The position numbers and the translations under genes were made by a program. The notes under the pieces are model-generated. The model ran no database searches. It was given only the letters and a program-made list of their open reading frames with translations, and had not been told where the DNA came from. DNA of 64,000 bases from the NCBI RefSeq assembly GCF_001194135.2, contig NC_068984.1:54419524-54483523 (forward strand). The letters are read 5' to 3'. Shown in pieces: positions 11,831-61,767 of this stretch (positions are counted from its first letter, which is position 1; every line of letters starts with the position of its first letter). Origin of the DNA: Octopus bimaculoides. Its lineage: Eukaryota.

Positions 11831-13399
11831 CCGGTTATAACTCCCGTAAAAATCCAGAGGATCAGGTTTTTACGGGAGCTGTACCGATGATTGTTAAGAG
11901 AGAGAGAGAGAGAGAGAGATACTATTGTAGTTGGTTGGATCTAATGGGTTACCTTTCTTGAGAATGGGGCACATAGTTGTGTTTTTTAAAGATCAAGGTA
12001 TATCTTTGTAGAGCGGAGAGGTCGAAAAGCTTGAAGCGTAAAAGGTCTAACTCTGAATGCCATGCTGGAGAAAGACTGAACAAATATTGTTAGGGCTAGT
12101 GACCTTGTTGATTATTAAAGATAATAGAGTACACTTGGTGCACTTTACTGTGCAGTCTGTCCCTAATCCTAATCCCAAACCCAACCCTAAATCCTAGCCC
12201 AAACTTTAAACCCAATTCTAAACCAGATGAGGTCATTTCACAGTGTTGACTACAGATACGCTAAAGTAGCAATGCGCAGTCTAAGAGATTTGATCGTGCT
12301 ACCGAATAGAAAATTTGGTTGTTGTTGGCAGTTGTGAAAATAATACCAGCTGTCATATAAATAATACTTGGCTGTCATATAAACTTTATTAACCGACAGA
12401 TGATGAAAATGAAATCTGAATAAGCAACAAATCTAATGATTAAAACCCACAATGACAAGCTCGTTTCTATAAAAGCATATGAACATTAAAAAAAATATGG
12501 TGAATACATGTACGAGAGGTAAGTCCAGGAAACCTACTTCCATTTCATTTCCAATATTCTTTACAAGAACACTTTTCTTTCTACAGAAGCGCTCTATCGT
12601 CTTTAATAACTGACAAGGTCACTGACCCTGAAAATATTCCTGCAATTTTTCTCTAATTCCCTAAGCATGTATTTATGACAATGTGTCTTTGTAATATTTT
12701 AGGTTTTACATTGATTACTTTTAGATAAGATGGTTGTATATCACGCGATTGACTTTTGAATACATTTCAAAAATCGTTCTTGCGTCGTTGTTTCTTTCTT
12801 TCAATAATACCCAAAATAATGTGTTTGTAAACGTGTTATGGCGTGTTTGCACAAAAATAGCTGGCTAAAATACAGGTAGTCATTTGATAGATTTTATGAT
12901 GAGGGAGATTTAATTGCTAACTTCTAGCTTGTCGAGCGACTGCATAGAAGATCAATCGTTAATACACCATAGTACATGTTAACTATATACATGCTTTCAG
13001 AATTTTACAAGTGCTTTATTTTTTTTCCACTCTGGATAAACCCCAAATAGAGCTTAACAGAACTTAGGTCAAGCATTGGCAATTTTTCCGAGAAACGGGC
13101 CGTATGAGATATGGTCATCATCACGCAGGTCGCACTATTTAAATAATTCAGAACTTTTCGTAAGACAAGCTGCACGCGGCCAGCGGTTTGCCCAATATTG
13201 AACTAGGAGATATTGTAAAATGTCACCAGAGAAAAAGGTTGCTAAAAGAAGTATAAAAAGACTTTAACTGCGGAAATCCAAACGAGCCCCCACCCCTTCA
13301 AATAAAAATACTTCCGCTTAAATGAATGATAAATTTAAACATTTTACTGGTTATAGGAAACTTCGTCTTTTGCTGTGACCAGTTCATGATCCGCTTCAT

Positions 13400-13740: not shown

Positions 13741-14271
13741 TAAAATTTTATTTTACTCAAAATGAACTTCAAACGCATCAGTCTGAAATGTGAGCGTTGC
13801 TCTTTCTCATTCAAAAATAATAAAAAAAGGTGGCGATCTTACGTTACGTGTCCTTTTTGATCGCCGTAAGTAACAAAAAAGCCAGAGACATTAAAGCTTT
13901 GAAATTCATTAACTTAGAATAAATTACTAGTTCTGATTAATAAACTGTAGTTTACTTATCCATTTAAGAGTGCATGTTCGTTAAATGATTTAGTTTTATC
14001 CATTTATTTAATTTCCACAGCTAAAATACGGAGTAACCCGCCTAAAGCCATGTTGCTTTCAGCTGTCTGACCTTGTACGAAGAATTCTTCGAGACGAAGT
14101 TATATTTCTAGCAAAGAGCAACAACAAGTGTAAGCAATAAACACTTTCCTATGTAGTTACAGCTACTAGCTGCTGCATCACAACCACTATTACTAGATTC
14201 AAACAAACGTCAGTAGCCCAGATTCTCTGTTCGTGACAAGTTCGTGGTAATCCGACGTAAGCTTTTCACAC

Positions 14272-14649
14272 ATGCCTGCCAAAACGATTCCACCTAACCC
14301 TAAACTAAATGGGGTACCTATAGTGGACATCGGAGAACAAGGATTCAGCAGGTATGTCCTATGCAAAGTATACGATGGAAATAATCCTAAAGACTTCCAG
14401 TACATCGTTCGCGGTTCTACAATCGCTAAATTCCATGCAGACATTTTCGACTTGGTGGATGCTGAACTTGAAATCCATGGGCTAAACTGTATATGTGTGG
14501 GTGGTGGCAAAATGGAGCACTTACCCGAGGCTGGAACGATTCATGTGTACGGTCGATCTCAAGGATATGGCCGAGCTGACCACTCAATCACGACAGAGCT
14601 TGTGCGAGAATCATATCCTCATTACAACAGTATCACTTGGGATGACTGA
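14272..14649 (+). CDS. PHPT1: 14 kDa phosphohistidine phosphatase (PHPT1/Janus-ocnus family), intronless CDS, 125 aa
   Basis: Intact ORF with family motifs IVRG, KFHADIF (the human catalytic His53 context is EYHADIY), CVGGGK, IHVYGRSQGYGRADH and the terminal ITWDD. ATTAAA at 14729 and AATAAA at 14764, each running into an A tract. Confidence 0.93.
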   Translation: MPAKTIPPNPKLNGVPIVDIGEQGFSRYVLCKVYDGNNPKDFQYIVRGSTIAKFHADIFDLVDAELEIHGLNCICVGGGKMEHLPEAGTIHVYGRSQGYGRADHSITTELVRESYPHYNSITWDD

Positions 14650-16869
14650 CTGATGTTTCAGATATTTTTATCTTCGTTTTTGGAAGATACAAGAATCTCT
14701 ATGATTCCGAACTAAGTACAGAAAGTAAATTAAAAAAAAAAAGGTAAAACAATTCTAAAATGGAATAAAAAAAAAAAGAAAAATGTTAAAATTGTTGAAG
14801 ATAAAACAACTCGAAGTTGGAAAAATATTTTCGAGAAATATACACATCTATTTTGAGAAATTTACTTTTCTAAACGAACAATGACAATAAGTGATTAATA
14901 CGTTGTATCCAAAAGCAAACAAAATTTTATTCTAAAATTGCTAAAAAAAAAAGAAGATAATGTTGAACAATGTAGAGCTAAAAGTAAACAAAACAAATCA
15001 AAAAGAAACAAAACTGAAAAGTCGCTAATTATCTTATGACGTTAGATTGGATAAAACCGTACTTTAGGCAATTAACAAAATTATGAGGTAAGTTCTTTAA
15101 CTTGCAATTTCAAAAACTTATAAAACTTTTTCGATTAGCAATGGAAATTAAGAAGAACTAAAGATGATTTTAAAACAACAACGTAAGGTAAGGATAATGT
15201 GAACTTTGAGGAAGACATTTTAGCTTTGCATTTATTTGTTACATTTTTTTTATTAAAAAAGAATATTCTGAATTAATAACTGATTTGAAATTTACAGAGA
15301 CTATTATTGCAAGTCTTTGTTTCAAGATTTTCAATAACGTAGTTCCTACACGCATGAACAACAAACACTCGCATGAATATATACCACACGCACTGACAGT
15401 ACAAAGTATCCCAAAACATACTATTTTGTTTTCACATTTACTTATCCTCTGTTTTACTGGATACACCTGAAATTTGAACCACATCAAGAGTAGAATGCAA
15501 CAGTTCTTTTTTTCTTGTTTACTTTTCAAAAATCTGTGTTTGTGTGCAAACGCGTGTGTAATTGAGAGCATCCATGTGTATGCATTAGTTGAAGTGTGCT
15601 CGCAACCTGGCGGCAAACTGCGTATTATTTTTGTTTCTTCTCAGTACGGAATTATTTTCATGACGTAGTTCTTCATTCTGCAGGAATCTTGTGTCTTAAA
15701 AAGTACTTGCTTGAGAGATAGTACTTACGAGATTTAAGATTATTTCTTTAGCTTAAAAATTTTCGGCAAAATTCATTTACTTTTCTAGCAGAACAGATTA
15801 TGTGGTACCTTTAGATATAGCTTTATCATTCCTAATTAAACTGGTTGCCATAATAATTAACTGTTACATTTGCTCAAATAAGGAATCTTATACCTGATTT
15901 TTCCGTCTATTCGCAAATAAAACTTCACACATTAAAAAAAAAACCAATAATAATAATGAGCTTATAGTACGCAGCGCTCAAGTGCGGCATGTGTTTATCT
16001 TCCTTTCAATATGCATAATAAATGTTAAAAAAGATATTACTTGCGAAGATATGACTTCAGAGTACTATAAAAATAACTGAGTTCCTGATTGACGTAGTTG
16101 CTGCCAGACACCTGATTTTAATATACAAACCATAAAGTAGAGGTAGTCTTAAACGTTTCAACGTGTTTTGGGTAAAACAAGTCTAAGGGAGGCAATTATG
16201 AAATGTTTTTCTTTTATTTACCTGATTTTATTCATCATAAAAGTTATAAATATTTGACATTAATTAAAAATTTAAGGAAAAGTAAAAACATAATTATATG
16301 ACTAATTTAAAATAATGACTTGAATTTGATTAGTATTGCTATAGAAAAATTAACACCTCAAATCCAGTAGCTGAATATATTGTAAGTGAACGGAAGTTTA
16401 TTTATGTAAACATTTCTATTAACATTAGATTAGACACTTGCCTATTTGTGGGCATATACGTTCTAGCAGCATTACCTGGCCTTTTCGGTTTATCAATGTC
16501 TTGAAAAGACGCAGTCACCTGAATTTATTATATTTGTGATAAATTGTTGTCAAAAGAAGCAGAAATTTTCATTTTGTCCGGTGAAATTGCTTCACTCAGA
16601 ATTGTTGCATCCAGACTATCCAGGGGAATATTTACAAGAAGGCGCAATAAATGAATAAACAATATACAACCTAAAATATATTTTTTACTCTACTTTAATT
16701 TGTGGGATAGTATGTTCTATTTAAAATACTACATAAATTTGCATAATTAGTTTCAATTATGTTTTGTAAGCGTAATTTTCCCTATGTCTTTTGTAGCAGT
16801 GAGGGAAGATACCAGATTCTTAGTTATATATATAATCAAAAAGTATCAGAAAATGTCACGTAGCCTATT

Positions 16870-27107: not shown

Positions 27108-29471
27108 CAGCTATGGCAAACCTATGGCACAAGCATCTAAAGTAGCACTTTGGATTAGAAATGATGCATTATTCATTCATCCATAATTGTTCAATATGTG
27201 TTTGATTCTTGCTTGATTTTGTTGTGACACCAGCCCATTACAGTTTTTTAGCTGTCAGATTGCAGTAGGCACTCCTATGCTATACAGTTGTACTTTGTTT
27301 GATAAGGGTCTGTAATTTTTTGAAAATTAGGCCTTGTTTTAATTTTTTTCCATCTCAGTGCAAAAGAAAAACAGTGACAGCAATTGTGAATTCAACAAAC
27401 AGTGGGGGGAAAAAGCTCTTGTAGTAGGCAATTCAGGAAAACTTTTGTGAATTGTTTGTGAAGATAGTTTCACATATTAAAAGACATGATCTTAACACAC
27501 TGTACAAAACATAACATAAGACTTAAATAGAAGGTAAGCTGAAGTTAGTGCTTGGGTGTGAGTTGATAAAATATATGTGTTGAAAGAAATTGTGAAAGTT
27601 TGGTGATAAGCATTGGTAAAAGAATAGTAGATATTCTTTGATGGAAGGAGAAATTGTTAGGCTGAGGTTGCAAATAAATTTTGGTAATGGAAAATATTAA
27701 GGAAAAAAGTAAATGGAATTAGTATGTGAAAGCAAATGGTTATAAGACACACCAACTGTCTGTCTATCTATCTCTGTCTGTCTATCTATCTCTGTCTGTC
27801 TATCTGTCTCTGTCTGTCTATCTGTCTCTGTCTGTCTGTCTATCTGTCTCTTGATGTATTTGAGCAACTGAAAGGATCTTTCCATTCTGGTGCTTTATTC
27901 CCTGTAGCTTTGGATAAATCTACTGACATATGTGATACACCCCACATAAGAATTTTAATAAGAATTTTAGTGACTTTGAATTACTTGTCTTGAGTTCCTT
28001 CATGGAAAAATAATATCAGACTTATTTAACAAAGTGAAGTCATTCTTGGAAAGTCTAAGTAAATTCATCTTTTTAATTCTGATGACTGGTAAAGCTGTTG
28101 AGATAACAATTTTGCTTGAAAATGTCTGCAATCATTCTCAAGTAAAAATATCACAGCATTGTATGCCAAGGACTTTAAACCTGCAGTGCAAAAATATTGA
28201 GTGTTGTGAAATGTTGGCATAAAATTGGGACAAGAACATTAAAAAGATAAAAATTCAGAGGATACTACAAAATGGTAGATTTGGAATATGGCAATCATGC
28301 CAGCTCATCTATTATATAGGAAAGCTAACCCACCTTTCAATTATTTAGCTAGTTTTCTAGAGGGCAGGTTCTAAGTAGATTTTTGGAAAATGAAAAATTC
28401 TGCTAGTAATGTTCTAGAAGACGAAAATTACTTGCTTAACAGTAGAGCCCTTTTATATTTTTTTTTACTTGTTTCAGTCATTTGACTGCAGCCATGCTGG
28501 AGCACAGCCCTGTAGAGTTTTTTAGTTGAACAAATCGACCCCTGGACTTATTTTTTTTAAAGCCTAGTACTTATTCTATCAGTCTCTTTTGCCGAACCAC
28601 TAAGTTACAGGGATGTAAATACACCAACACCGGTTGTCAAGCAGTGATGGGGGACAAACACAGACACAAAGACATACACACACACACACACACACACATA
28701 CGATAGGCTTCATTCAGTTCCTGGCTACCAAACCCACTCACAAGGTTTTGGTCAGCCTGAGGCTATAGTAGAAGACAGTTGCCCAGGTGTCGTGCAGTGG
28801 GACTGAACCCAGAACCATGTGGTTGGGAAGCAAGCTTCTTATCACACAGTGATGCCTGTGCCTATAATAACAATTTTTTATTTGATTTAGATTTTTATTT
28901 AGCTGACATTATTAGATGTATCAATGATCTAAATCTGAAACTACCAGACAATAACAAATTATTTCCAAGCTTAGTAAATGATATATCACCGTATTCATGA
29001 AATTAAAGCTGTTCATTTCCCAGCTTCAAAATGAGAATTTGCGCCAGTTTTTGCTCTTAAGAGCAGCGTGACGGTGCTGAAGATAATGGCACTTTTATAA
29101 AGTATGTTGTAAACAAAAAAAATCAGATTAGTGCTAGAGCCATTTAAATGTTGTTTTCATGATCTTGTTAGAGAGGAAAACAGCATACTCACATGACAGA
29201 AACTGAAAGAAGCCCGTTGTGTATATATATATATATATATATAAAAGAATGAGATCAAGAGACCAATGGCATTAAAATATAAATTTACTTATGCCATTGG
29301 TCTCTTGATCTCATTCTTTTTTTATATATACACACGCTAATACACGACCCATGTTGTATTCATCACTCATGTTGCAACCACGTCAGGGGCAAAACTAGTC
29401 AGTATACAGTACTTACTCGGTATTACCTGTATCTTTAGGGTTTGATTGACTCCATTACCCTTCGTAAACTT

Positions 29472-34666: not shown

Positions 34667-35918
34667 CAAGGTGTTTGGGATAAATTTGACAGTTTACATA
34701 AAAGGGAAAGAGAGCTCAATATCCCATCCAAAAATAAAAGTATTTTAAAATATCAAAAAATATCGACTAGATTATGGCTGGGAGATAATAGATCACTTGA
34801 AGTAGCTGCCTTCACCACAGCCTCAAGATGGTACCAGAACCTAGTATGTGTTCCTCGCATACCAGGTTCTCATGCGTCCAGGGGATATATTTGAAATCTT
34901 CTTGGTCTTGGCCTCCAGCTTGGCCTGCTGTTTTTCTCAACAACACCCAACACATAGTAATCCATCTAATTACAACTGGGGGAATTAGGAGGCCAGAAAC
35001 TGGGGCTGGTGAAACCATAGGAGTGGCTGCATGGTAAGTAGCTTGCTTATCAACCACATGGTTCCGGGTTCAGTCCCACTGCGTAGCACCTTGGGTAAGT
35101 GTCTTCTACTATAGCCTTGGGCCGACCAAAGCCTTGTGAGTGGATTTGGTAGACAGAAACTGAAAGTAGCCCATCGTATATATGTATATATATATGTGGG
35201 TGTGTGTATATATTTGTTTGTGTGTCTGTGTTTGTCCCCCGAACATCGCTTGACAACTGATGCTGGTGTGTTTACGTCCCCGTAACTTAGCGGTTCAGCA
35301 AAAGAGACCGATAGAATAAGTACTAGGCTTACAAAGAATAAGTCCTGGGGTCGATATGCTCGACTAAAGGAGGTGCTCCAGCATGGCCACAGTCAAATGA
35401 CTGAAACAAGTAAAAGAGTAACCACTTCTGACTGTTTCTGGAGATATAGCAAGGAGTTGTGAATCCTGCTGGAACACATATTGCATTCCAGCAGCAACCC
35501 TTTCCAGCTAAGGTTTGACCACAGTCTCTAGCAGCTTCACATAACCTTCAGAATTGAGCTTAAGGCCCTGTTCAAAGGTGTAGGGTGGCATGACTTCACC
35601 CTCACTGGAGACACACCTAAAGACCACCACAGTTTGGGTTTTTATGACATCCATGTCACATCTTAACCCTTTACAGTGCTCACAGAACATTGAGCAGCAG
35701 TCATGACATCAGTATTTTGATACCTGCATAAATCACGATTCACGTAACATTTTTTCCAATATTCAGATGGCTTCTGATCCTCCATGTCAGCTAAGTTTTT
35801 CTCAACTACAACTTTAATTTTTATGCTTTCCAATGCCATTGACTGTTTACCAATATGAAGTTGTTACTCAAAAAAGAAGACATAAAAAAAAATCATCAAA
35901 TTTAGCCTGAACACCCTA
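34667..35918 (-). mobile_element. Deleted maT/DD37D-type Tc1/mariner element with a SINE B inserted at about 35014-35420
   Basis: Remnants VSSEGEVMPPYTFEQGLKLNSEGYVKLLETVVKP, YVFQQDS, FWPPNSPSCN*MDYYV and HLEAVV. TIRs caaggtgtttgggataaatttga and tcaaatttagcctgaacacccta, with TA flanks. Confidence 0.8.
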
Positions 35919-44091: not shown

Positions 44092-45600
44092 TATAGAAGG
44101 TTAACAACATGTTGAGACTAGATATTCTGCACATATTTAAATATATCTAATATCTATCTTTCGTGAAAATTTCAAGTGAACGGAATAAATATTTCGTAAT
44201 TTATGAAGAAATAAACAAACAATCTTCCAAATCGCTGCGGCTAAAAGTTAAGGGTCACTTAGAAAAAAATGAACTACTAACCAAGGTATTTGTTGTTTAG
44301 AAGATTGTTAATGGGTTAACAGTTACTTCTTATGATATTACATTATTGGAACATTCAACTGGCAACATGGCAGCTTGTGAGAGATGACCGGTGTCCTGTG
44401 ATGAAAAACAAAGGATTGTGTGCCTTCACCGAGAGGGCAAGTCAAATCCTGTGATAGCAACTACTGTAGGAAGGTCTAGAAGTTTTGTGCCACGAATTCT
44501 AGCTCGTTTTAAGTCACCAGGTTCGACAGATGATTAACCCCAAACTGGTAGACCTCGTAAGACTTCACCAAGACAGGATCGTATTATGGTTAGAATGTCA
44601 CTGAAGGATAGGTTTAAGAGTGCTGCTGAGATATTCCGCGAGTTTAGCTTCACTTCCGATGTCAAAGCAGTTCCTCGAAGGCTACGAGGTTCTGGGTTGC
44701 TTGCTCGGGCTCCGGCAAAGAAACCTCTGATCGCCAAAAAGAATCAAAGAGCTCGTCTTCATTTCACTCACGAACATGTCGTTTGGACAGAAGAACAGTG
44801 GTCGTAGGTTCATTTTAGCGATGAAGCGAAGTTTAATGTGATTGGTTCCGATGGCGGGATGTACGTCCGACGAAGAAGTGGCGAAAGGTTATCTAGTGTA
44901 CGTGTGAAGAAGACAGTGCAATATGGAGGAGGCAGTGTGATGGTATGGGGAGCGATCTCTGCTGCTGGTCCAGGTGTATTCATACGCCTACAAGTGACTG
45001 TCAACTGAAATCTACAAGCAGATTCTTAGACAGCATACCCCTTGCACATTTCCGATCCTCGTCAGTTCAACTTCTTTTCTTCGTGCAGGACAACGCTCCC
45101 TGTCACATTGCGAAGAGAGTCATAGGCTTTATGAGTGATGAAGGGGTTGATCTCATGGACTGGTCACCTCAAAGTCCCGATCTCAGCCCTATAGAAAACG
45201 TTTGGAAGATTACTGGAGATGGGGCGCGAAGGAGAAATCGAAAGAACCAAGATGAACTCTGGTAATTATTGGAAAACAAATGAAACAATATTACTTCATC
45301 ATTTTGCAAGAAATTAATTAAGTCTTGAGATAACAGATGTCAGGAGGTTATTGATAGTAAAGGGATGTTCACAAAATATTAATAGTAAGGGTTTCTTTTT
45401 TGTTTTTAGTCCATTTTCATTGTTTTTCTAAGTGACCCTTAACTTTTGGCCATTGCAGATAGAAAGATTATTTGTTTATTTCCTTATAACTTACGAAATA
45501 TTTATTCCATTCACTTGAAATTTTCACGAAAGGTAGATATTAGATATATCTAAATATGTGTAAAATATGTAGTCTCAACGTTTTGTTAATCTTATCTATA
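44092..45600 (+). mobile_element. Tc1-like (DD34E) transposon, defective, with inverted repeats of about 200 bp
   Basis: VHFSDEAKFNVIGSDG...VRRRSGE...QYGGGSVMVWG, FVQDNAPCH and DWSPQSPDLSPIENVW. Arms at about 44092-44290 and 45395-45600. Stops and frameshifts are present. Confidence 0.92.
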
Positions 45601-50173: not shown

Positions 50174-51412
50174 TTGGGCTATCCCATAAATAATGGGTTT
50201 TTTTCAATTTCATGAACTAAAAGTCGGAGGGGGAAGGGATAAACTACCTGCATCAACTTGTTATAAAAGCAGGTTGTAATTTAACTTTGGTTTTATTTTT
50301 AGTGTAAGTTTTGAAGAGTGCAGTTCTATTTTCAGTTATTTTTTCAAAGCTATAATGAAAGTGACAAAGGAGCATATTCGGTATATATTGCTTTATGAGT
50401 TCAATGAAAGCAACAACGCAACGGAAAGTGCGAGGAATATTAATGCAGTATATGGGGATCGGACAATAAGCGTAAGCCGGTGGTTCCAGAAATTCTGAGC
50501 TGGAAACTACAGCCTAGAGAACAAACCTCGTCCTGGAAGATCTGTAGAGCTCGACGAGGAACAAAATTCCAATCGTAACTGTTGAAGAACTAGCTTGGAT
50601 TTGGTCATTCAACCATTCATCGACACCAGTGTGCCATAGGAAAAGTCAGCAAATTGGGTCAATGGGTTCTTCAAAAACTTTCCGAGTCTAATCGCGCGCA
50701 GAAAGTGAATGTGTTCTCTTCTTTGCTGTCACGTCTCACGAATAAACTTTTTTTGGACCGAATAGTAACTGGTGACGAGAAATGGGGTTTCTATAAAAAT
50801 GTCAAGGGCCGAAGAGAGTGGGTAGGGAAAGGAGAAACACCGGCATCCCAGGCTAAAAAAGGTCTTCACTCACGTAAGGTGTTATCTGTTTGGTGGGATA
50901 TGGAAGGTTTAGTCCACTTTGAACTTTTAAACCCAAACTAAACGATAAGAAAGGGGATCTACGGTGAGTAGCTTGAGCGACTTAAATCAACGCGAGGAGG
51001 AAAAAGATCATCTTTGGTTTCAAGACGAAAGGTGTTCTTCCACCAGGTTAATGCTCGGCCACATACAGCAAGGATGACATTCCAAAGGCTGGAGCAGTTT
51101 GAATGGGAAACGATGCTCCGCCCACCATATTCACCGGACATTGCCCTTTCTGATTACCATTTATTCCGCAATCTTCAAAATGATTTGGACGGCAAAAATA
51201 TGAATTCTGTAGACGAGATCAGAACTGTACTGGCGGAGTATTTTTCATCACGGACAACTGAATTTTGGAAGAGGGGCCTTGCAAGTTTACCAGATAGATG
51301 GAAGAGCATTGTAGAAAATGAAGGAGAGTCTATTTTAAATTAAAAAAGAGCTATATCTTAATTTTGAAAAAATAGAAGTAGTATAAAAAAATCGCATTAT
51401 TTATGGGATGAC

Positions 51413-51452: not shown

Positions 51453-52319
51453 ATGAGAGGTAATGGTGTCAGTAAGACCCAAAGGTGTCAGGTAATGCTG
51501 AGTAAGTGGTATGGATAGACCATAGTTAAGCTCCTGGTTCGGTGATTATGCGAATAAGGAGTCAGCGTGTGTATATAAAAAAATTAATATATATATTACA
51601 CACACACACCACATATATATATACACAAATACACATACATACAAATATATATATATATGTGTGTATATCTATGTGTTTGACAACCGGTGTTGCTATGTTT
51701 ACGTTCCTGTAACTAGCAGCTCATCAAAAGATATCGGTAGAAAAAGTACAAAGCTTAGAAAACAAACTGACAAACAAAAATGTAAGTACTGGGGTCGATT
51801 CATTCGACTAAAATTCCTCAAGGTGGTGCCCCAGCATGGCCACGATCTAATGACTAAAACAAGTAAGATAATTTTTTGCGTTAGAAGTAGGAGTGTTCAC
51901 GCTTGCTCTTGAGGGTTAATTCCCTTATTTATTTGTATTTTGGGGTCTACAGTAACAGCAATGAGTAGGTGAAGAATAAAACACTCGAGTTGTTTCCCTT
52001 TAATTCAAACTATCAATAACGTTTTGTAGGAGAAAGGATAGTTTGAATAAAAAAAAAATAATCTTAAACTTACTTTTAATTAACAAATTTTGGTACTGCA
52101 AGTTAAAGACTATATCATTTGTTTTATAAATAATTCCAAGTAGGTTTTAATCCAATTTTCAAATAGCAAGTTTTAAGTAATAACATTTATATTTTCTGAC
52201 ATAAAATACTAATGACTTTAGTTTTATAATTTGTTTGTAAAGGTTGGTATGCTGCAGAATTGTTTGGATATCAAAAGAGAAAAAGGAAGAACAAAAAATT
52301 AGTGATATTTTATCTGACT

Positions 52320-52620
52320 TATGACATTGTGAGTTCAAATCTTACTGAGGTCAACTTTGCCTTTCATTCTTTTTTTCTGTTTTTTTTTTTGGGGGGGGGG
52401 GTCGTGGAGGTTTGATAAAATAAACTATTAATCTCCCTTAAAAATTGCTGATTTTGTGCTAAAATCAGAAACCATTAAGATGGCGAAGTGGCAGAATTTT
52501 GCAACGTCGAAAAAGAAGAAAAAAGAAAAAGATGTCGCAAAGTGTTTTGTTCTGGTTTGCTCCGAGATCAACTTTTCCTTTTCATACTTTTGGGGTCGAT
52601 AAAATAAAGTACCACCCAGG
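52320..52620 (+). mobile_element. Two degenerate SINE family A copies
   Basis: gagttcaaatcttactgaggtcaactttgcc and tggcagaatttt...ttttggggtcgataaaataaagtacc. Confidence 0.65.
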
Positions 52621-52640
52621 TATTTTGGGTCGATAAAGTA

Positions 52641-52989
52641 TCCCTCAAGTATTTTGCCTAAGGTACACTTGCTGAATCCTTGTTCTCCGATGTCCTCTAT
52701 AGGTACCCCATTTAGTTTAGGGTTAGGTGGAATCGTTTTGGCAGGCATGTGTGAAAAGCTTACGTCGGATTACCACGAACTTGTCACGAACAGAGAATCT
52801 GGGCTACTGACGTTTGTTTGAATCTAGTAATAGTGGTTGTGATGCAGCAGCTAGTAGCTGTAACTACATAGGAAAGTGTTTATTGCTTACACTTGTTGTT
52901 GCTCTTTGCTAGAAATATAACTTCGTCTCGAAGAATTCTTCGTACAAGGTCAGACAACTGAAAGCAACATGACATTAGGAGGGTTATTC
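52641..52989 (-). pseudogene. PHPT1: Inverted 5' fragment of PHPT1 (5' UTR plus about 36 codons)
   Basis: 52670-52971 is the reverse complement of 14049-14350 with 2 mismatches, and weaker homology continues on both sides. I found no further PHPT1 sequence by eye. Confidence 0.9.
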
Positions 52990-53064
52990 TGTTTGAACTA
53001 GAGAAAAAGTGAGTGAGTGAGTGAGAGAGAGAGAGAAACATTGAACGAATATGTACATATAGAC

Positions 53065-53395
53065 GTAGGCGTGACTTTATGGCAAGAAGTTTGCTTCCCA
53101 ACCACATGATTTCAGTCCCACTGCGTGACACCTTGAGTATGTGTCTTCTACTAAAGCCTTGCAAATGAATTTGGTAGACGGAAACTGAAAGAAGCCCGTC
53201 GTACACACACACGTGTGTGCGTGCGTGTGTTTGTTCCCCCACCACTACTTGACAAGCGGTGTTGTGTGTTTACATCTTCGTAACTTAGTGGTTCGGCCTG
53301 AGAATCGATAGAATAAGTACCAAGCTTAAAAAAGACAAAATAAGAACCGGGGTTGATTCAGTCTAATGCCTGAAACAAGTAGAAGGTAAAAGAAA
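53065..53395 (+). mobile_element. SINE family B copy
   Basis: gtttgcttcccaaccacatgatttcagtcccactgcgtgacaccttgag...gaaactgaaagaagcccgtc. Confidence 0.8.
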
Positions 53396-53399
53396 TGAA

Positions 53400-56215
53400 C
53401 TGACAAATAGTCAATGTAATCTGCATATTATTGATTAGAATTTCTAATTTCCAACAAATCAATATTGTTACCAATATTAAAAAGAAAAAAAATTGTTGGA
53501 AGACGAAGAACAACGTTGATGACCTTCCAGATGAGTCAATGATGGTCAGTTCATGCACAAAAGAAGAAACATGGCGAAAAATCGGTAAGCCGAAATTATT
53601 TATATATAAAAAAATGTAGCATATGGTGTTACAAGAAAGAAACTATATTTCATCGGCGAATGTATTTGCAACGTAACTTTTCGAGATGAAACGAAAAGAA
53701 CAATCATTTATGTATTGAAAAAAATTACTAAACCTATTTGGCACAGAATGTATAGAGTTATTTAAAATGTGGGATACTCCCATTAGTGTTCTCTGTGAAA
53801 ATGTAGTCGGCACGGTTAAAAGTTCGAATGAAGTCGAATAATTGAAACAAAAAATTAAAAAAATGTTTCCAAAAAATTGTTTCTTGGAAGGATTAGGCTG
53901 TTGCACCAAAACAAAAGCGAGGATCGTAGTAAAAGAAAAGGCAACGCCTGTTTTTAGGCCCAAACGGAATGTGCTGCTTGCGGCGTTTGACTAGGTCAAT
54001 AAGAACTTGAAAGACTAGAAAGTTTAGTTATAACTGAAAAATTCGACCATTCAGACTGGGCAGCTCCGACGGTTTTAGTCGAACACAATTATTCATTACC
54101 AAGCCCAGAAGAAGTGTTTTCAAAACTGAATGGAGGAAAAGTTTTCTCGAAGTTAGACCTCTCGGAGACCTATCTACAGATACAGGTAGAGGAAGATTGC
54201 GCACACCTTTTAACAATCAACACACACACCGTAGATTGTATAAATTCAAGCGGTTTCCTTTGGGAGTAAAAGTGGCACCTGCTATAAATAAATGAATACA
54301 GGTTTAGACTAACAGAGGAAAAATGTGAAGATGGCAGCCAAAAGGCTATAGCTCATGCATCAAGGACGCTATTGCCAGCGAAAAAAAAAAATATAGCCAA
54401 ATTGAAAAATAGGCACTGGCGATTATATTTAGAATAAAAAAGTTCCACAGGTCTATACATGGTAGGCGGTTTAGACTACAAACAAACCATCGCCCGTTGC
54501 TAACGATTGATGGATTCAAGAAAGGAATCCCAGAACATACAGCAAACAGGTTGCTGCAATGGAGCACCATACTACCAAACTAAGACTACACAATGGAATA
54601 TTTACCTTCAAAAAAGCTAGGACATGCTGACGGCCTATCTAGGTTAATATCCAGAAATAGCAAACCATTCGAGGACACAGTAAGAGCCGAAGGGGAGATG
54701 AAACACATAGTGTGGAACATTGTACGAGAGTTACCAATAACTCTGGAAGAGATAAAGCGACACGCGTCAAAAGGTAGGTTCATTAATGAAAAAAAAAAAA
54801 AAAACCCCTCTACAGTCAGCCAAAGAAAACAAAAATAGGTTCGGTAAGAAAAAACAGTAATAGATAAACATGCATTCAACATGCGACGGCGTACTGATGT
54901 ATGGTCAAAAGGTAGTGATACCTGAAACTTTACAAAAAAAGAATGTTGAAAATTCCATATTGGACATCCGGGAAAAAAGCGCTTATGCGCAGTTATGTGT
55001 ATTGGCCGAAGATGGACAAGGAAGTTGAAAATGTAGTAAAAGACTGCAGAGGATGTTGCTCTGGCAGCGAAATTTCCTACTCAATAATGGCCAAAAGTAA
55101 AAAAACCATGTTCAAGATTACTTATCGATTTTGTGAGGCTGTTAAATGGTTATTACTACTTAGTAGTAGTTGACAGTTTTACAAAATAGCTGGAAATTGT
55201 TAAGTGCAAAAGTCCAACTGCCTCGATTTTAATAAATTTTTTTGCATGAATTATTCGCAAAATTTGGCATCTCGGACGTGATTGTATCTGATAATGGAAC
55301 ACAATCTGTGTCTAGTGAATTTAGAAAATTTTGCGAAATGTTCATCGTAGAACATAAAAAGATAGCGCCTTACCGTCCCAGATCAAATGGACAGGCAGAG
55401 CGTTTTGTGGACATTTTAAAAAGAACTTTGAGAAAAGAAAACAAGGAAGGCACCGACGAAGTTGCTCTGCAGCAATTCCTAAGGGTATACAGGGTGACAC
55501 CGAACCCCAATACACCAGCAGGAAGCTCACCAGCAGAACTGATGTTTGTGAGGAAGGTGAAATCAGTTTTTAATAGACTGTTAACTGGCAAAGAAAGAAT
55601 AAGTACCAGGAAAGACAATCCCAAATTTTTGAAAATTGCTGATAAGGTGTACATGAGGTCGTATAAAAACGGAAAACAGTACTGGGAAGAAGGCAAAATT
55701 ACAAAGTACATAGGGAAAATGATGTACGGAATTAAAAGTAGAAAAGGTATTGAAAAAAGATACAGAAAGCAATTGAAGAAGAAATTCATAGAAAATAAAC
55801 CAGACAGATTAGAAGAACCTATGGAATGGCTGTATGACACATTCCAGGTACCAACACCGTTACAGGTGGTTGAACCCACGCGTACAAGTGGAAGAAAAAA
55901 GAACACAGAGTTCCTAAAAATAGAAGCCAAAAAGAAAAAAAAAATATTAAGTTGCAAAAAAGAAAAACCGCTAAAGAAGAGGAGGGGTGAATAAAGTAAA
56001 ATAAAATTACTTGCTTCCCAAAGTTTTTTGTTGGAGTCTTCTTCCAGTGTTCCCTGTTGGAGTCAGTGTCAATTACCGTGTTACATATGAGTTCGAGTTA
56101 CCGTCATAGTAGACGCTTCAAAGTCATTGTCTTGCGGAGCTATTAGCGAAAGCACGATAGACGAGTCAAAGAAAATAAGACTCGGAATACCGACACAACA
56201 TAATAGTGGCGACAA
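53400..56215 (+). mobile_element. Degenerate Gypsy LTR retrotransposon (K02A2.6-like pol), with a PPT, one LTR (55988-56200) and a PBS-like motif
   Basis: RT remnants (LPSPEEVFSKLNGGKVFSKLDLSETYLQ), RNase H (YSQIEK*ALAIIF...TNHRPLL...HADGLSRL), integrase zinc region (YVYWPKMDKEVENVVKDCRGC) and integrase core. A purine tract precedes a TG...CA segment. Confidence 0.9.
55242..55994 (+). CDS. Gypsy integrase core open frame (part of a defective element)
   Basis: IVSDNGTQ...APYRPRSNGQAERFV...YRVTPNP...SPAELMF. Confidence 0.75.
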   Translation: MHELFAKFGISDVIVSDNGTQSVSSEFRKFCEMFIVEHKKIAPYRPRSNGQAERFVDILKRTLRKENKEGTDEVALQQFLRVYRVTPNPNTPAGSSPAELMFVRKVKSVFNRLLTGKERISTRKDNPKFLKIADKVYMRSYKNGKQYWEEGKITKYIGKMMYGIKSRKGIEKRYRKQLKKKFIENKPDRLEEPMEWLYDTFQVPTPLQVVEPTRTSGRKKNTEFLKIEAKKKKKILSCKKEKPLKKRRGE

Positions 56216-56324: not shown

Positions 56325-56705
56325 TTAACTTTTACTTGTTTCGTCATTGGAGTGCAGCCATCCTGGGACATCAACTTGAAGAGTTTTAGTCGATCAAATC
56401 GACGTCAGTATTTATTTTTTTAGCCGGGTACTTATTCTATCGGTGCCTTTTGCTGAACCGCTATTTCATTGGGACGTAAGCAAACCAACACCAGCTGTGA
56501 AGAGGTGGTGGACACGTGCACACACGCACATACACATGTGTACGACAGATTCTTTCAGCTTGAATCTAGCAAATTTACTTACAAGGCTTTGGTTGGCTCG
56601 GGGCTATAGCAGAAGACACTTGCCAAAGGTGCCGCGTAGTGGGACTGAACCCAAGGACTCATTGTTGGGAAGCAAGCGTCTTACAGCACGACTACGCCTG
56701 CGCTT
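56325..56705 (-). mobile_element. SINE family B copy
   Basis: Consensus-like, with CpGs retained. Confidence 0.8.
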
Positions 56706-61156: not shown

Positions 61157-61188
<32 letters not shown>

Positions 61189-61352
61189 ACGACGGGCTTC
61201 TTTCGGTTTCCATCTACCAAATCCACTCACAAGGCTTTGGTCGGCCCGAGGCTATAGTAGAAGACACTTGCCCAAGGTGCCACGCAGTGGGACTGAACCC
61301 GGAACTATGTGGTTCGTAAAGAAGCTACTTACCACACAGCGACTCCTACGCC
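60940..61352 (-). mobile_element. SINE family B, full length, young
   Basis: Very close to the consensus, with CpGs retained. Confidence 0.88.
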
Positions 61353-61767
61353 TTGTGAGCTTTTATGTATTCACACGTCCTTGATTCTATATTGATTATT
61401 CTTTTTTATTTATACGTGTGAGTGAAAGACATGTACTAAGGACAAACATAGAATTAAACATTTATTGTATATATTTGCATACGCAATTTATACCCCCTCA
61501 CTATCCGACAAGAGCGCGAATTATGAAGCAAAACAAATTCGCAGTTGAGAGTTAGCTACCTTTATATTGATCTTTTCCATCGAAATCAAATAGATTCAGC
61601 ATTTTGCCAACCAATGAATATTACGGATAATTTATTGTAAAGTGGAAATTAATTAAATTTACCAAGTTATATGACGCAACTACTGAACTAATCACTCTAG
61701 TTTCTTTTTATATCAATGTAATTTCTTTAAGGAGGCTTTTAACTATATATATATATATATATATACG

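What the first reader, a model, noticed from the sequence alone, without database searches (positions are those of the whole stretch)
52641..52989. Inverted PHPT1 fragment with a near-identical core inside older diverged homology: a probable long-range gene conversion tract
Seen: 52670-52971 is the reverse complement of 14049-14350 (302 bp) with only two mismatches, a C/T in the UTR and a T/A giving Val->Glu. Identity then drops abruptly but does not vanish. The next 29 nt on the coding side match ungapped at 18 of 29, and 8 of the 11 mismatches are transitions (KCTLGKILEG versus RYVLCKVYDG). The 18 nt on the UTR side match at 14 of 18. Both copies also have a pyrimidine tract plus AG about 10 nt further upstream. 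Inference: this is an old inverted paralog, truncated by SINE sequence, whose core was recently homogenised with the functional gene 38 kb away. If one transcript spans both copies, or the fragment is transcribed, it would form about 300 bp of dsRNA over the PHPT1 5' UTR and start codon. Coleoids are established to have extensive ADAR editing. Caveats: the coding-side flank also resembles the SINE A tail, and consensus cross-polishing during assembly could mimic conversion.
Basis: partly seen in the sequence, partly recalled or inferred. Interest (0 to 1): 0.8.

Follow-up and report, generated by a model that had tools for sequence, protein, structure and literature searches.

The report
Old PHPT1 fragment kept identical by conversion
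A 350-base inverted, untranscribed leftover copy of the start of the octopus PHPT1 gene, 38 kb from the real gene, whose middle has most likely been kept almost identical to the gene by repeated copy-correction (gene conversion); a real but ordinary piece of genome evolution.

Summary
52670-52971 is the reverse complement of 14049-14350 (302 nt, 2 mismatches). The adjoining flanks match at 16/21 and 18/29, then similarity stops.

It is not an assembly artefact. K-mer contigs from seven individuals reproduce both junctions and both diagnostic letters with no differences, at two-copy depth.

It is not young. The same fragment sits at the same SINE-flanked site in four other coded octopus taxa, one of which matches O. 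vulgaris. Non-coding DNA here differs by about 6-7% between species.

The flanks are about 30% diverged. One flank site keeps a letter otherwise seen only in Argonauta. Lineage-specific changes in the fragment lie only at the edges of the homology block, with none in the central 260 nt, where about 8.6 are expected. One parental variant (14144) appears to be shared by gene and fragment within each species.

The best reading is an old DNA-level inverted partial duplicate, cut off by a 5'-truncated SINE, whose centre is homogenised by recurrent intrachromosomal gene conversion (confidence about 0.7).

The dsRNA/ADAR idea finds no support. All 33 RNA reads over the diagnostic site carry the gene's letter, and no A-to-G changes appear.

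This is a known kind of event and of low interest.

The parts
14272..14649 (+). PHPT1 coding sequence (125 aa, one uninterrupted ORF); the functional parent gene
   Evidence: ORF list. Pfam PF05005 Janus/Ocnus, E=2e-33. 98% identical to annotated 14 kDa phosphohistidine phosphatase-like proteins of Argonauta hians and O. vulgaris. Covered by RNA reads.
14021..14271 (+). 5' part of PHPT1 exon 2 before the start codon. It is the long-isoform 5' UTR. Most RNA cover starts only at about 14230-14246, so much of it acts as proximal promoter for the main transcript.
   Evidence: The X16 RNA contig joins 12518|12519 (AG|GTAAGT) to the acceptor ccacag|CTAAAATAC at 14020|14021. Raw RNA depth is zero before about 14171. 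The O. vulgaris mRNA contig ends at the position equivalent to 14246.
14049..14350 (+). Parent arm of the near-identical core (302 nt)
   Evidence: Only 3 differences from the O. vulgaris parent (14060, 14144, 14308), against about 6-7% in surrounding non-coding DNA.
52670..52971 (-). Fragment arm of the core: an inverted copy of promoter, 5' UTR and the first 26 codons of PHPT1
   Evidence: Junction-spanning k-mer contigs with 0 differences in 7 individuals.
52697..52956 (-). Central 260 nt that are letter-for-letter identical between gene and fragment; the inferred actively converted tract in this species
   Evidence: A single shared 260-nt contig whose depth equals fragment plus parent (X10: 102.8 = 50.7 + 52.1). 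Zero differences, where about 8.6 are expected for one lineage since the species split.
52696..52696 (-). Fragment-specific substitution (Val to Glu codon), 27 nt from the 3' edge of the core. Derived in the fragment and inferred to be shared by the fragments of organisms B, C, D and F.
   Evidence: All parents (O. vulgaris, L002, Argonauta) have T. Separate fragment and parent contigs persist through 52679-52710 in the other species, which requires a difference there. RNA reads all carry the parental letter.
52957..52957 (-). Fragment-specific substitution, 15 nt from the 5' edge of the core; arose in this species' lineage
   Evidence: Parents of all species have C. The fragment-linked contigs of organisms F and D carry the parental letter.
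52641..52669 (-). Diverged 3' flank of the fragment (18/29 to codons 27-36 of PHPT1); old homology
   Evidence: All 11 mismatches are shared by the fragments of organisms B, C, D and F, which add 52643 and 52657. The first letter (AAG, Lys27) equals the Argonauta state, whereas all Octopus parents have AGG.
52972..53056 (-). Diverged 5' flank of the fragment. It comprises 21 nt at 16/21; with a 2-nt gap, an aligned pyrimidine tract and AG; a (CT)n/(CACT)n low-complexity stretch; and a possible further collinear match at 53036-53056 to intron 13970-13990 (17/21).
   Evidence: The outer 17/21 match is only suggestive: 2.7-5% of nulls reach its score before allowing for collinearity. At 6 of 6 sites where the two species' parents differ, the fragment has one of the two states.
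14351..14379 (+). Parent sequence (codons 27-36) that matches the diverged 3' flank
13970..14048 (+). Parent sequence matching the diverged 5' flank: the intron 3' end, the acceptor at 14020/14021 and the first 28 nt of exon 2
52300..52644 (-). 5'-truncated SINE with an internal partial duplication, abutting and truncating the old homology
   Evidence: BLAST against the many SINE copies in the window: matches start at 52614, a few at 52634-52644. Very high k-mer depth.
53058..53230 (-). Second, unrelated short interspersed repeat bounding the fragment on its 5' side
   Evidence: Matches to 35018-35205, 28629-28866, 61188-61353 and 56501-56702 end at 53058-53066.

Best explanation
The locus at 52.6-53.06 kb is a non-functional relic of an old, DNA-level, inverted partial duplication of PHPT1. 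The duplicated piece covered the end of intron 1, the acceptor site, promoter and 5' UTR, and at least the first 36 codons. The relic lies 38 kb downstream of the gene on the same chromosome. A SINE removed or replaced everything beyond codon 36, and low-complexity sequence has overgrown part of the intron side.

The outer parts have drifted to about 62-78% identity. The central block stays almost identical to the gene. When a break in one copy is repaired, the other copy is used as template. This is non-allelic (interlocus, intrachromosomal) gene conversion, and no crossover is needed.

Conversion needs good homology. Mismatches that arise near the edge of the block are therefore not corrected, and the block erodes inwards. 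Mismatches in the centre are erased again and again.

Shown:
- the anatomy;
- that the fragment is real;
- its presence at the same site in other species;
- the edge-only distribution of lineage-specific changes;
- the absence of detectable transcripts in organism A.

Inferred: the conversion mechanism itself, its recurrence, and the donor direction (mostly gene to fragment, because the gene is under selection).
For: 1. Identity step. There are 0/260 mismatches in the centre, 2/42 in the outer core and 16/50 in the flanks, with nothing beyond. The flanks are non-random (p about 1e-5 each) and are not SINE.

2. The fragment is real. Fragment-specific contigs 52586-52726 and 52927-53034 have 0 differences in 7 individuals from 3 studies. 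The shared 260-nt contig is at summed depth.

3. The fragment is old. Contigs of organisms B, C, D (X20) and F span the same SINE/core junction (52300 or 52400 to 52776). Contigs of D and F run from the core into the same 5' flank, to 53025 and 53036. Non-coding divergence between organism A and O. vulgaris here is about 6-7%.

4. The flanks are older still. All 11 mismatches of the 3' flank are shared across species. At 14351 the fragment keeps A (Lys27), as Argonauta does, while the parents of all three Octopus taxa have G.

5. Lineage-specific fragment changes lie only at block edges.
- In the A lineage they are 52957, 52972 and 52974, with none in the central 260 nt. At 3.3% about 8.6 are expected, so P is about 2e-4.
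- In the B/C/D/F lineage they are 52643, 52657, 52678, 52746 and a 26-nt deletion at 52711-52736. None is seen in 52747-52979.

6. Concerted state at 14144/52876. It is C in both copies of A. In B, C, D and F only the T state is seen, including in contigs that continue into the fragment's own flank (X51, X45).

7. The tract edge differs between species. D and F carry parental letters at 52972 and 52974.

8. Conversion between linked paralogs in either orientation, with tracts of tens to hundreds of bases, is well documented (PMC3966223).
Against: No complete fragment sequence from another species was obtained. The states in the shared region of other species come from Logan contigs, which pop bubbles and clip tips. 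Isolated paralog differences there could be hidden, so the 'concerted' 14144 state is not proven.

The sharing of 52696 across species is inferred from graph logic. It was not read directly, because the tool did not list that position in contig mode.

The parental core is itself strongly conserved between species (about 1%). Part of the low divergence could therefore reflect constraint or a locally low mutation rate rather than conversion.

No polymorphic conversion tract was caught in 7 individuals.

The homology block (about 300 nt) is short and 38 kb from its partner, conditions under which conversion is expected to be infrequent.
Confidence: 0.7

Rival explanations
1. Duplicate of moderate age without any conversion. 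One duplication of about 350-415 nt happened shortly before the species split. The core has stayed similar by chance, by a low local mutation rate or by constraint. The flank mismatches were made at or near the time of insertion by error-prone repair synthesis, or the flank resemblance is microhomology that guided the junctions.
For: The parental core is very conserved between species, at about 1% against 6-7%. In the B/C/D/F lineage the 3' part of the fragment does decay at about the neutral rate. Evidence for concerted states rests on contigs.
Against: No known repair synthesis gives 24-38% mismatches over 20-30 nt, and 11 of the 16 mismatches are ordinary transitions.

The Lys27 letter matches Argonauta.

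Zero changes in 260 nt against about 8.6 expected, while 3 fall in the adjacent 18 nt.

Constraint on the fragment is contradicted by its 26-nt deletion in four taxa.
Confidence: 0.12
2. The fragment is kept by selection because it does something. One possibility is a duplicated PHPT1 promoter that drives an antisense or hairpin-forming transcript, giving dsRNA over the PHPT1 start and an ADAR or small-RNA substrate. Another is a regulatory decoy. The centre would then be conserved by purifying selection.
For: The core contains the proximal promoter, the main start site at about 14230-14246 and the start codon. The fragment has persisted in at least five taxa. One RNA-labelled O. vulgaris run (X45) holds low-depth contigs across both fragment junctions, at 2.1-3.2 against 36 for the mRNA.
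Against: In organism A, 33/33 RNA reads and the RNA contig over 52696 carry the parental letter. There is no RNA cover of 52399-52569 or 52855-52968, and no A>G or T>C changes over the overlap.

No indexed RNA run holds the junction words beyond the core share.

Four taxa carry a 26-nt deletion and extra substitutions in the core.

The X45 signal is compatible with genomic DNA or intronic RNA.
Confidence: 0.06
3. Young templated insertion or recent segmental copy of 302 nt into a SINE-rich site, specific to this species, with chance flank resemblance.
For: Only 2 mismatches in 302 nt, with sharp edges.
Against: The fragment is present at the same junctions in four other coded taxa. Flank similarity has p of about 1e-5 on each side. 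The flank mismatches are shared across species.
Confidence: 0.02
4. Assembly artefact: a collapsed or cross-polished repeat, or a chimeric scaffold join, created the near-identity.
For: The window is a gapped scaffold with runs of N.
Against: Independent k-mer contigs from 7 individuals in 3 studies reproduce both junctions and link each diagnostic letter to its own flank. Depth is twofold in the shared part.
Confidence: 0.01
5. RNA-mediated origin: a chimeric retrocopy made by reverse-transcriptase template switching from a SINE RNA to a PHPT1 transcript. This would explain the 5'-truncated SINE abutting the fragment in the same orientation.
For: The SINE is 5'-truncated, co-oriented and directly adjacent. 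The parent has CAG|GTATGT at the core's 3' edge.
Against: Homology continues past exon 2's start into the acceptor site and probably the intron. It also continues 29 nt past the CAG|GT. No poly(A) or target-site duplication was seen. In any case this would explain only the origin, not the identity step.
Confidence: 0.05

Closest known systems
Interlocus (non-allelic, ectopic) gene conversion and concerted evolution between a gene and a linked pseudogene or partial duplicate. Examples are the inverted or tandem paralog pairs reviewed for Caenorhabditis in PMC3966223; from my own knowledge, also CYP21A2/CYP21A1P and the arms of Y-chromosome palindromes.
   Same: Two linked copies, here in inverted orientation. 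A tract of near-identity lies inside older, diverged homology. The tract length of a few hundred bases is in the usual range. Species-specific states appear to be shared by both copies. The identity block erodes from its edges.
   Different: The partner is a tiny relic of about 350 nt rather than a whole gene. The copies are 38 kb apart, further than the 1-8 kb range over which conversion frequency was seen to fall in C. elegans. No phenotypic or diversifying role is apparent. The event is inferred, not observed.
Duplicated (non-processed) pseudogene fragments
   Same: DNA-level copy including an intron end and an acceptor site. It is truncated, frameshifted or deleted in other species, and not detectably expressed.
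   Different: Ordinary relics decay uniformly. This one has a centre that does not decay.
Inverted-repeat dsRNA substrates of ADAR in coleoid cephalopods
   Same: Inverted near-identical sequence on one chromosome, in a taxon with heavy RNA editing.
   Different: The arms are 38 kb apart. No transcript of the second arm was found in organism A. No A-to-G mismatches were seen.

Membership tests
Interlocus gene conversion / concerted evolution | Two paralogous sequences at distinct loci in one genome | tested here: met
   The arms 14028-14379 and 52641-52992 are each linked to a different flank in reads of 7 individuals, at two-copy depth.
Interlocus gene conversion / concerted evolution | A tract with significantly fewer differences than the flanking homologous sequence (GENECONV-type criterion) | tested here: met
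   2/302 mismatches in the core (0/260 in the centre) against 16/50 in the flanks. The flanks themselves are non-random.
Interlocus gene conversion / concerted evolution | The duplication predates a speciation, yet the tract is more alike within species than between species | tested here: inconclusive
   Predating is shown: the fragment is orthologous in organisms B, C, D and F. Within-species likeness rests on one informative site (14144) and on contigs that can hide paralog differences, plus the edge-only pattern of lineage-specific changes.
Interlocus gene conversion / concerted evolution | Non-reciprocal transfer observed directly (polymorphic converted alleles or pedigree events) | tested here: not met
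   Seven of 7 individuals have the same two fixed diagnostic letters. The only polymorphism is 52980 A/C in X7, flanked by unconverted sites, and it is not a clear tract. The sample is small.
Processed pseudogene / retrocopy | Lacks intron sequence, starts at a transcript 5' end, and ends in poly(A) with target-site duplications | tested here: not met
   Homology runs through the acceptor at 14020/14021 into intron-side sequence. The fragment stops in mid-exon at a SINE, and no poly(A) or duplications were seen.
Young templated insertion / recent segmental duplication | Lineage-specific presence and unrelated flanks | tested here: not met
   The fragment is present at the same site in four other taxa. 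The flanks are related.
Natural antisense / inverted-repeat dsRNA substrate of ADAR | Both arms transcribed (on one RNA or on opposite strands), with A-to-G mismatches clustered over the paired region | tested here: not met
   In organism A, 33/33 reads and the RNA contig carry the parental letter at 52696. No fragment-specific RNA cover and no A>G were found. Depth was low, at about 9-18x from 6% of three runs. An RNA-labelled O. vulgaris run has weak junction contigs of uncertain origin.
PHPT1 (Janus/Ocnus family, PF05005), for the parent gene | Significant full-length match to the family profile | tested here: met
   The parent ORF matches at E=2.2e-33 over profile positions 2-108 of 108. 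The fragment's 106-aa ORF matches no family.

The most novel reading that the evidence does not exclude
The fragment carries a near-perfect second copy of the PHPT1 proximal promoter, start site and start codon, and has survived in at least five octopus taxa. It could be a conserved regulatory element. For example, it might be a tissue- or stage-specific promoter that fires on the minus strand and yields RNA complementary to, or competing with, the PHPT1 5' end, acting as an ADAR or small-RNA substrate. Conversion would then be the means by which it tracks the gene.
Probability: 0.04. Interest if true: 0.55.

Novelty: new member of a known kind. Interest (0 to 1): 0.2.

Why it matters
If the reading is right, this is a clean small example of concerted evolution. 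A relic of about 300 nt can stay in register with its parent gene across a species radiation while its edges erode.

It has three practical uses:
- It is a caution for annotation and variant calling at PHPT1, because reads from the promoter and first codons map to two places.
- It is a caution for RNA-editing screens, because the paralog difference at 14324/52696 (T/A) could be mistaken for a variant.
- It is a possible natural marker for estimating conversion rates in cephalopod genomes.

It does not reveal a new mechanism and shows no sign of function.

Tried and rejected
1. Assembly cross-polishing: rejected by junction-spanning contigs in 7 individuals.

2. The 3' flank being SINE tail: rejected. 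SINE matches begin at 52614-52644.

3. A wider ancient inverted duplication. A sensitive BLAST of 9-19 kb against 47.7-57.7 kb found only the known pair and a weak near-collinear match, 15046-15115 to 52156-52088. That match is not better than 10% of random genomic controls.

4. Further intron homology at 13970-13990 to 53056-53036 (17/21) is only suggestive.

5. Fetching the fragment of other species:
- The fragment's ORF hit only PHPT1.
- The neighbouring integrase ORF gave only paralogs of 79% identity or less.
- Loci fetched through PHPT1 orthologs reach only 10 kb on either side and hold no second copy.

6. ADAR hyper-editing of an RNA intermediate as the source of the flank mismatches: rejected. 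The changes go in all four transition directions (by inspection).

7. The 'other letters' table of read laying failed to list differences that must exist, such as 52696 and 52957 between the two copies in organism A. I therefore relied on piece counts and contig end-points where the table was silent.

Full report
**What is there**

In the register p + q = 67020, 14049-14350 on the plus strand equals the reverse complement of 52670-52971. The only two mismatches are 14063 C/T (52957) and 14324 T/A (52696, Val to Glu). The pair is the longest inverted repeat in the window (352 nt, 95%).

In the same register the next 21 nt on the upstream side match at 16/21. The next 29 nt on the coding side match at 18/29, and 8 of those 11 mismatches are transitions. 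Beyond that, identity falls to 20-37%.

Each flank is far from chance. Random window k-mers reach the observed match in about 1-3.5 per 100,000 trials. Anchored gapped extension beats 500/500 shuffles on the 5' side and 498/500 on the 3' side.

**The parent gene**

The ORF 14272-14649 is a 125-aa member of the Janus/Ocnus (PHPT1) family, with E=2e-33. It is 98% identical to annotated proteins of Argonauta hians and Octopus vulgaris.

An RNA contig joins an upstream non-coding exon ending at 12518 (AG|GTAAGT) to an acceptor at 14020/14021 (ccacag|CTAAAATAC). Most RNA cover begins only at about 14230-14246. The 'UTR' part of the core is therefore largely proximal promoter for the main transcript.

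With a 2-nt gap, the fragment's own tract and AG align to that acceptor. A further collinear 17/21 match (13970-13990 to 53056-53036) is suggestive but not secure. The duplicated piece thus included intron-side sequence, which points to a DNA-level origin rather than a retrocopy.

**Boundaries**

On the coding side, SINE homology starts firmly at 52614 and reaches 52639-52644 at most. The 29-nt diverged flank therefore ends exactly where a 5'-truncated, co-oriented SINE begins, and is not itself SINE. On the other side, an unrelated short repeat ends at 53058-53066. Low-complexity (CT)n/(CACT)n sequence fills part of the gap.

No other convincing collinear homology exists between the two neighbourhoods.

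**Real, not an artefact**

K-mer contigs from seven individuals of the same species (three studies, 2015-2025) behave identically:
- One 141-nt contig covers 52586-52726 with no difference, spanning the SINE/core junction and 52696.
- One 108-nt contig covers 52927-53034 with no difference, spanning 52957 and the core/flank junction.
- A separate long contig carries the parental letter.
- A shared 260-nt contig (52697-52956) has a depth equal to the sum of the two, for example 102.8 = 50.7 + 52.1.

**Old, not young**

Contigs of four other coded taxa (B, C, D, F) align from the SINE flank across the junction into the core, from 52300 or 52400 to 52776. They carry their own changes: 52643 C>A, 52657 C>T, 52678 C>T, 52746 C>T and a 26-nt deletion at 52711-52736.

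Contigs of D and F run from the core out into the fragment's own 5' flank, to 53025 and 53036.

Organism D matches the O. vulgaris chromosome assembly at private sites 14000 and 14060. Non-coding DNA around PHPT1 differs by about 6-7% between the window's species and O. vulgaris. The source species is probably O. bimaculoides; this is inferred from the names of transposon-protein hits and was not shown.

The fragment therefore predates this radiation.

**The flanks are older than the centre**

All 11 mismatches of the 3' flank are shared by the fragments of the other taxa. At 14351 the fragment has A (AAG, Lys27), the state of Argonauta. The parents of all three Octopus taxa examined have G (Arg27). 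This is one site, so it is only supportive.

Flank divergence of about 24-38% is several times the between-species divergence.

**Where the centre changes**

Polarising with the other species gives the following:
- The A-lineage fragment acquired 52957, 52972 and 52974.
- The fragment-linked contigs of D and F show the parental letters at those three sites.
- Position 52980 is variable: A in the reference, C (the parental letter) as a heterozygous allele in individual X7, and T in D and F.
- None of the A-lineage changes lies in the central 260 nt, where about 8.6 are expected at 3.3% per lineage (P about 2e-4).
- In the B/C/D/F lineage all four substitutions and the deletion lie in 52641-52746, and none is seen in 52747-52979.
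- The older change at 52696 is derived in the fragment, since all parents have T, and lies 27 nt from the edge.

In every lineage, mismatches therefore survive only near the ends of the uninterrupted homology block. After the 26-nt deletion, the new edge moved inwards.

At 14144/52876, both copies of A have C. In B, C, D and F only the T state is seen. That includes contigs that continue into the fragment's own flank.

Together these findings are what recurrent non-allelic gene conversion with eroding edges predicts. A uniformly decaying relic does not predict them.

**Caveats**

The other species are known only through Logan contigs, which pop bubbles and clip tips. Isolated paralog differences could be hidden in the shared stretch.

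The sharing of 52696 across species is inferred. The fragment and parent contigs stay separate through 52679-52710, which requires a difference there.

The tool's difference table omitted some differences that must exist.

The parental core is itself conserved, with 3 differences in 302 nt from O. vulgaris. However, constraint cannot explain the fragment, which tolerates a 26-nt deletion in four taxa.

I could not retrieve a full fragment sequence from another species.

**Function**

In three raw RNA-seq runs and one RNA assembly of the window's species, all 33 reads and the contig over 52696 carry the gene's letter. Fragment-specific sequence has no cover. No A-to-G or T-to-C change appears over the overlap.

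No indexed RNA run holds more of the locus than the gene itself explains.

One RNA-labelled O. vulgaris run holds very low-depth contigs across both junctions, at 2-3 against 36 for the mRNA. These may be genomic or intronic carry-over.

The dsRNA/ADAR idea is therefore unsupported, though depth was modest.

**Comparison with what is known**

Conversion between linked paralogs in either orientation is textbook, with tracts of tens to hundreds of bases and a frequency that falls with distance (PMC3966223). This case is a small, tidy new example.

It is unusual only in two respects: the relic is short, and it lies 38 kb from its partner. I found no report of it or of similar cases in octopus, but that search was shallow.

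**Verdict**

- The interpretation as a gene-conversion tract inside older homology is supported as the best explanation (about 0.7), with the correction that it is recurrent and partly ancient rather than a single recent event.
- The functional speculation is not supported.
- Interest is low.

Noticed in passing
window 12495-12518 and 14020-14021: PHPT1 has an upstream non-coding exon ending at 12518 (AG|GTAAGT), spliced over a 1.5-kb intron to an acceptor at 14020/14021. Most RNA cover starts only at about 14230-14246, which suggests two promoters or isoforms.
   Followed up: partly
window 14815: Every RNA read (36/36 in three runs) and the RNA contig show T where the window has A. This is either a fixed difference of the sequenced animals from the reference or an assembly error in the PHPT1 3' UTR. 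It is not an editing-type change.
   Followed up: no
window 14743 and 14953: Partial G>A differences, and a 1-nt deletion at 14743, appear in RNA of one run (X41) only. These are probably heterozygous variants in a poly-A-rich stretch.
   Followed up: no
window 13958-13986: Seven of the roughly eleven differences between the window's species and O. vulgaris upstream of the core fall within 29 nt. This is a local cluster, just where the possible outer homology with the fragment lies. At the six aligned sites the fragment has one or the other species' state.
   Followed up: partly
window 14348-14356: The 3' edge of the core coincides with CAG|GTATGT, a near-perfect 5' splice-site motif inside the PHPT1 coding exon. 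No RNA joint uses it in the runs examined.
   Followed up: partly
window 52980: A three-state site in the fragment's flank. It is A in the reference, C (the parental letter) as a heterozygous allele in individual X7, and T in organisms D and F.
   Followed up: partly
L001 1-9400 (O. vulgaris OX597817.1); window about 4.5-13 kb by synteny: A Snurportin-1 gene lies head-to-head upstream of PHPT1 on the minus strand in O. vulgaris. The window aligns collinearly there at 87-91%.
   Followed up: no
window 44945-45265, 50654-51343, 55242-55994: Transposon relics surround the fragment: a Tc1/DDE_3 transposase piece, a mariner Transposase_1 piece, and a retroelement integrase ORF (250 aa). The best relatives of the integrase are 66-79% identical proteins of O. 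bimaculoides and O. sinensis.
   Followed up: partly
window about 21.6-21.8 kb, 22.9 kb, 38.5-38.7 kb, 57.0 kb: Runs of N show that the window comes from a gapped scaffold.
   Followed up: no
run X45 on window 52466-52689 and 52774-53025: An RNA-labelled O. vulgaris run contains low-depth contigs across both junctions of the fragment. This may be weak transcription, intronic RNA or genomic DNA carry-over.
   Followed up: no
Read-laying output: The 'other letters' table did not list some contig differences that must exist, such as 52696 and 52957 between the two copies. Absence from that table is therefore not evidence of identity.
   Followed up: partly
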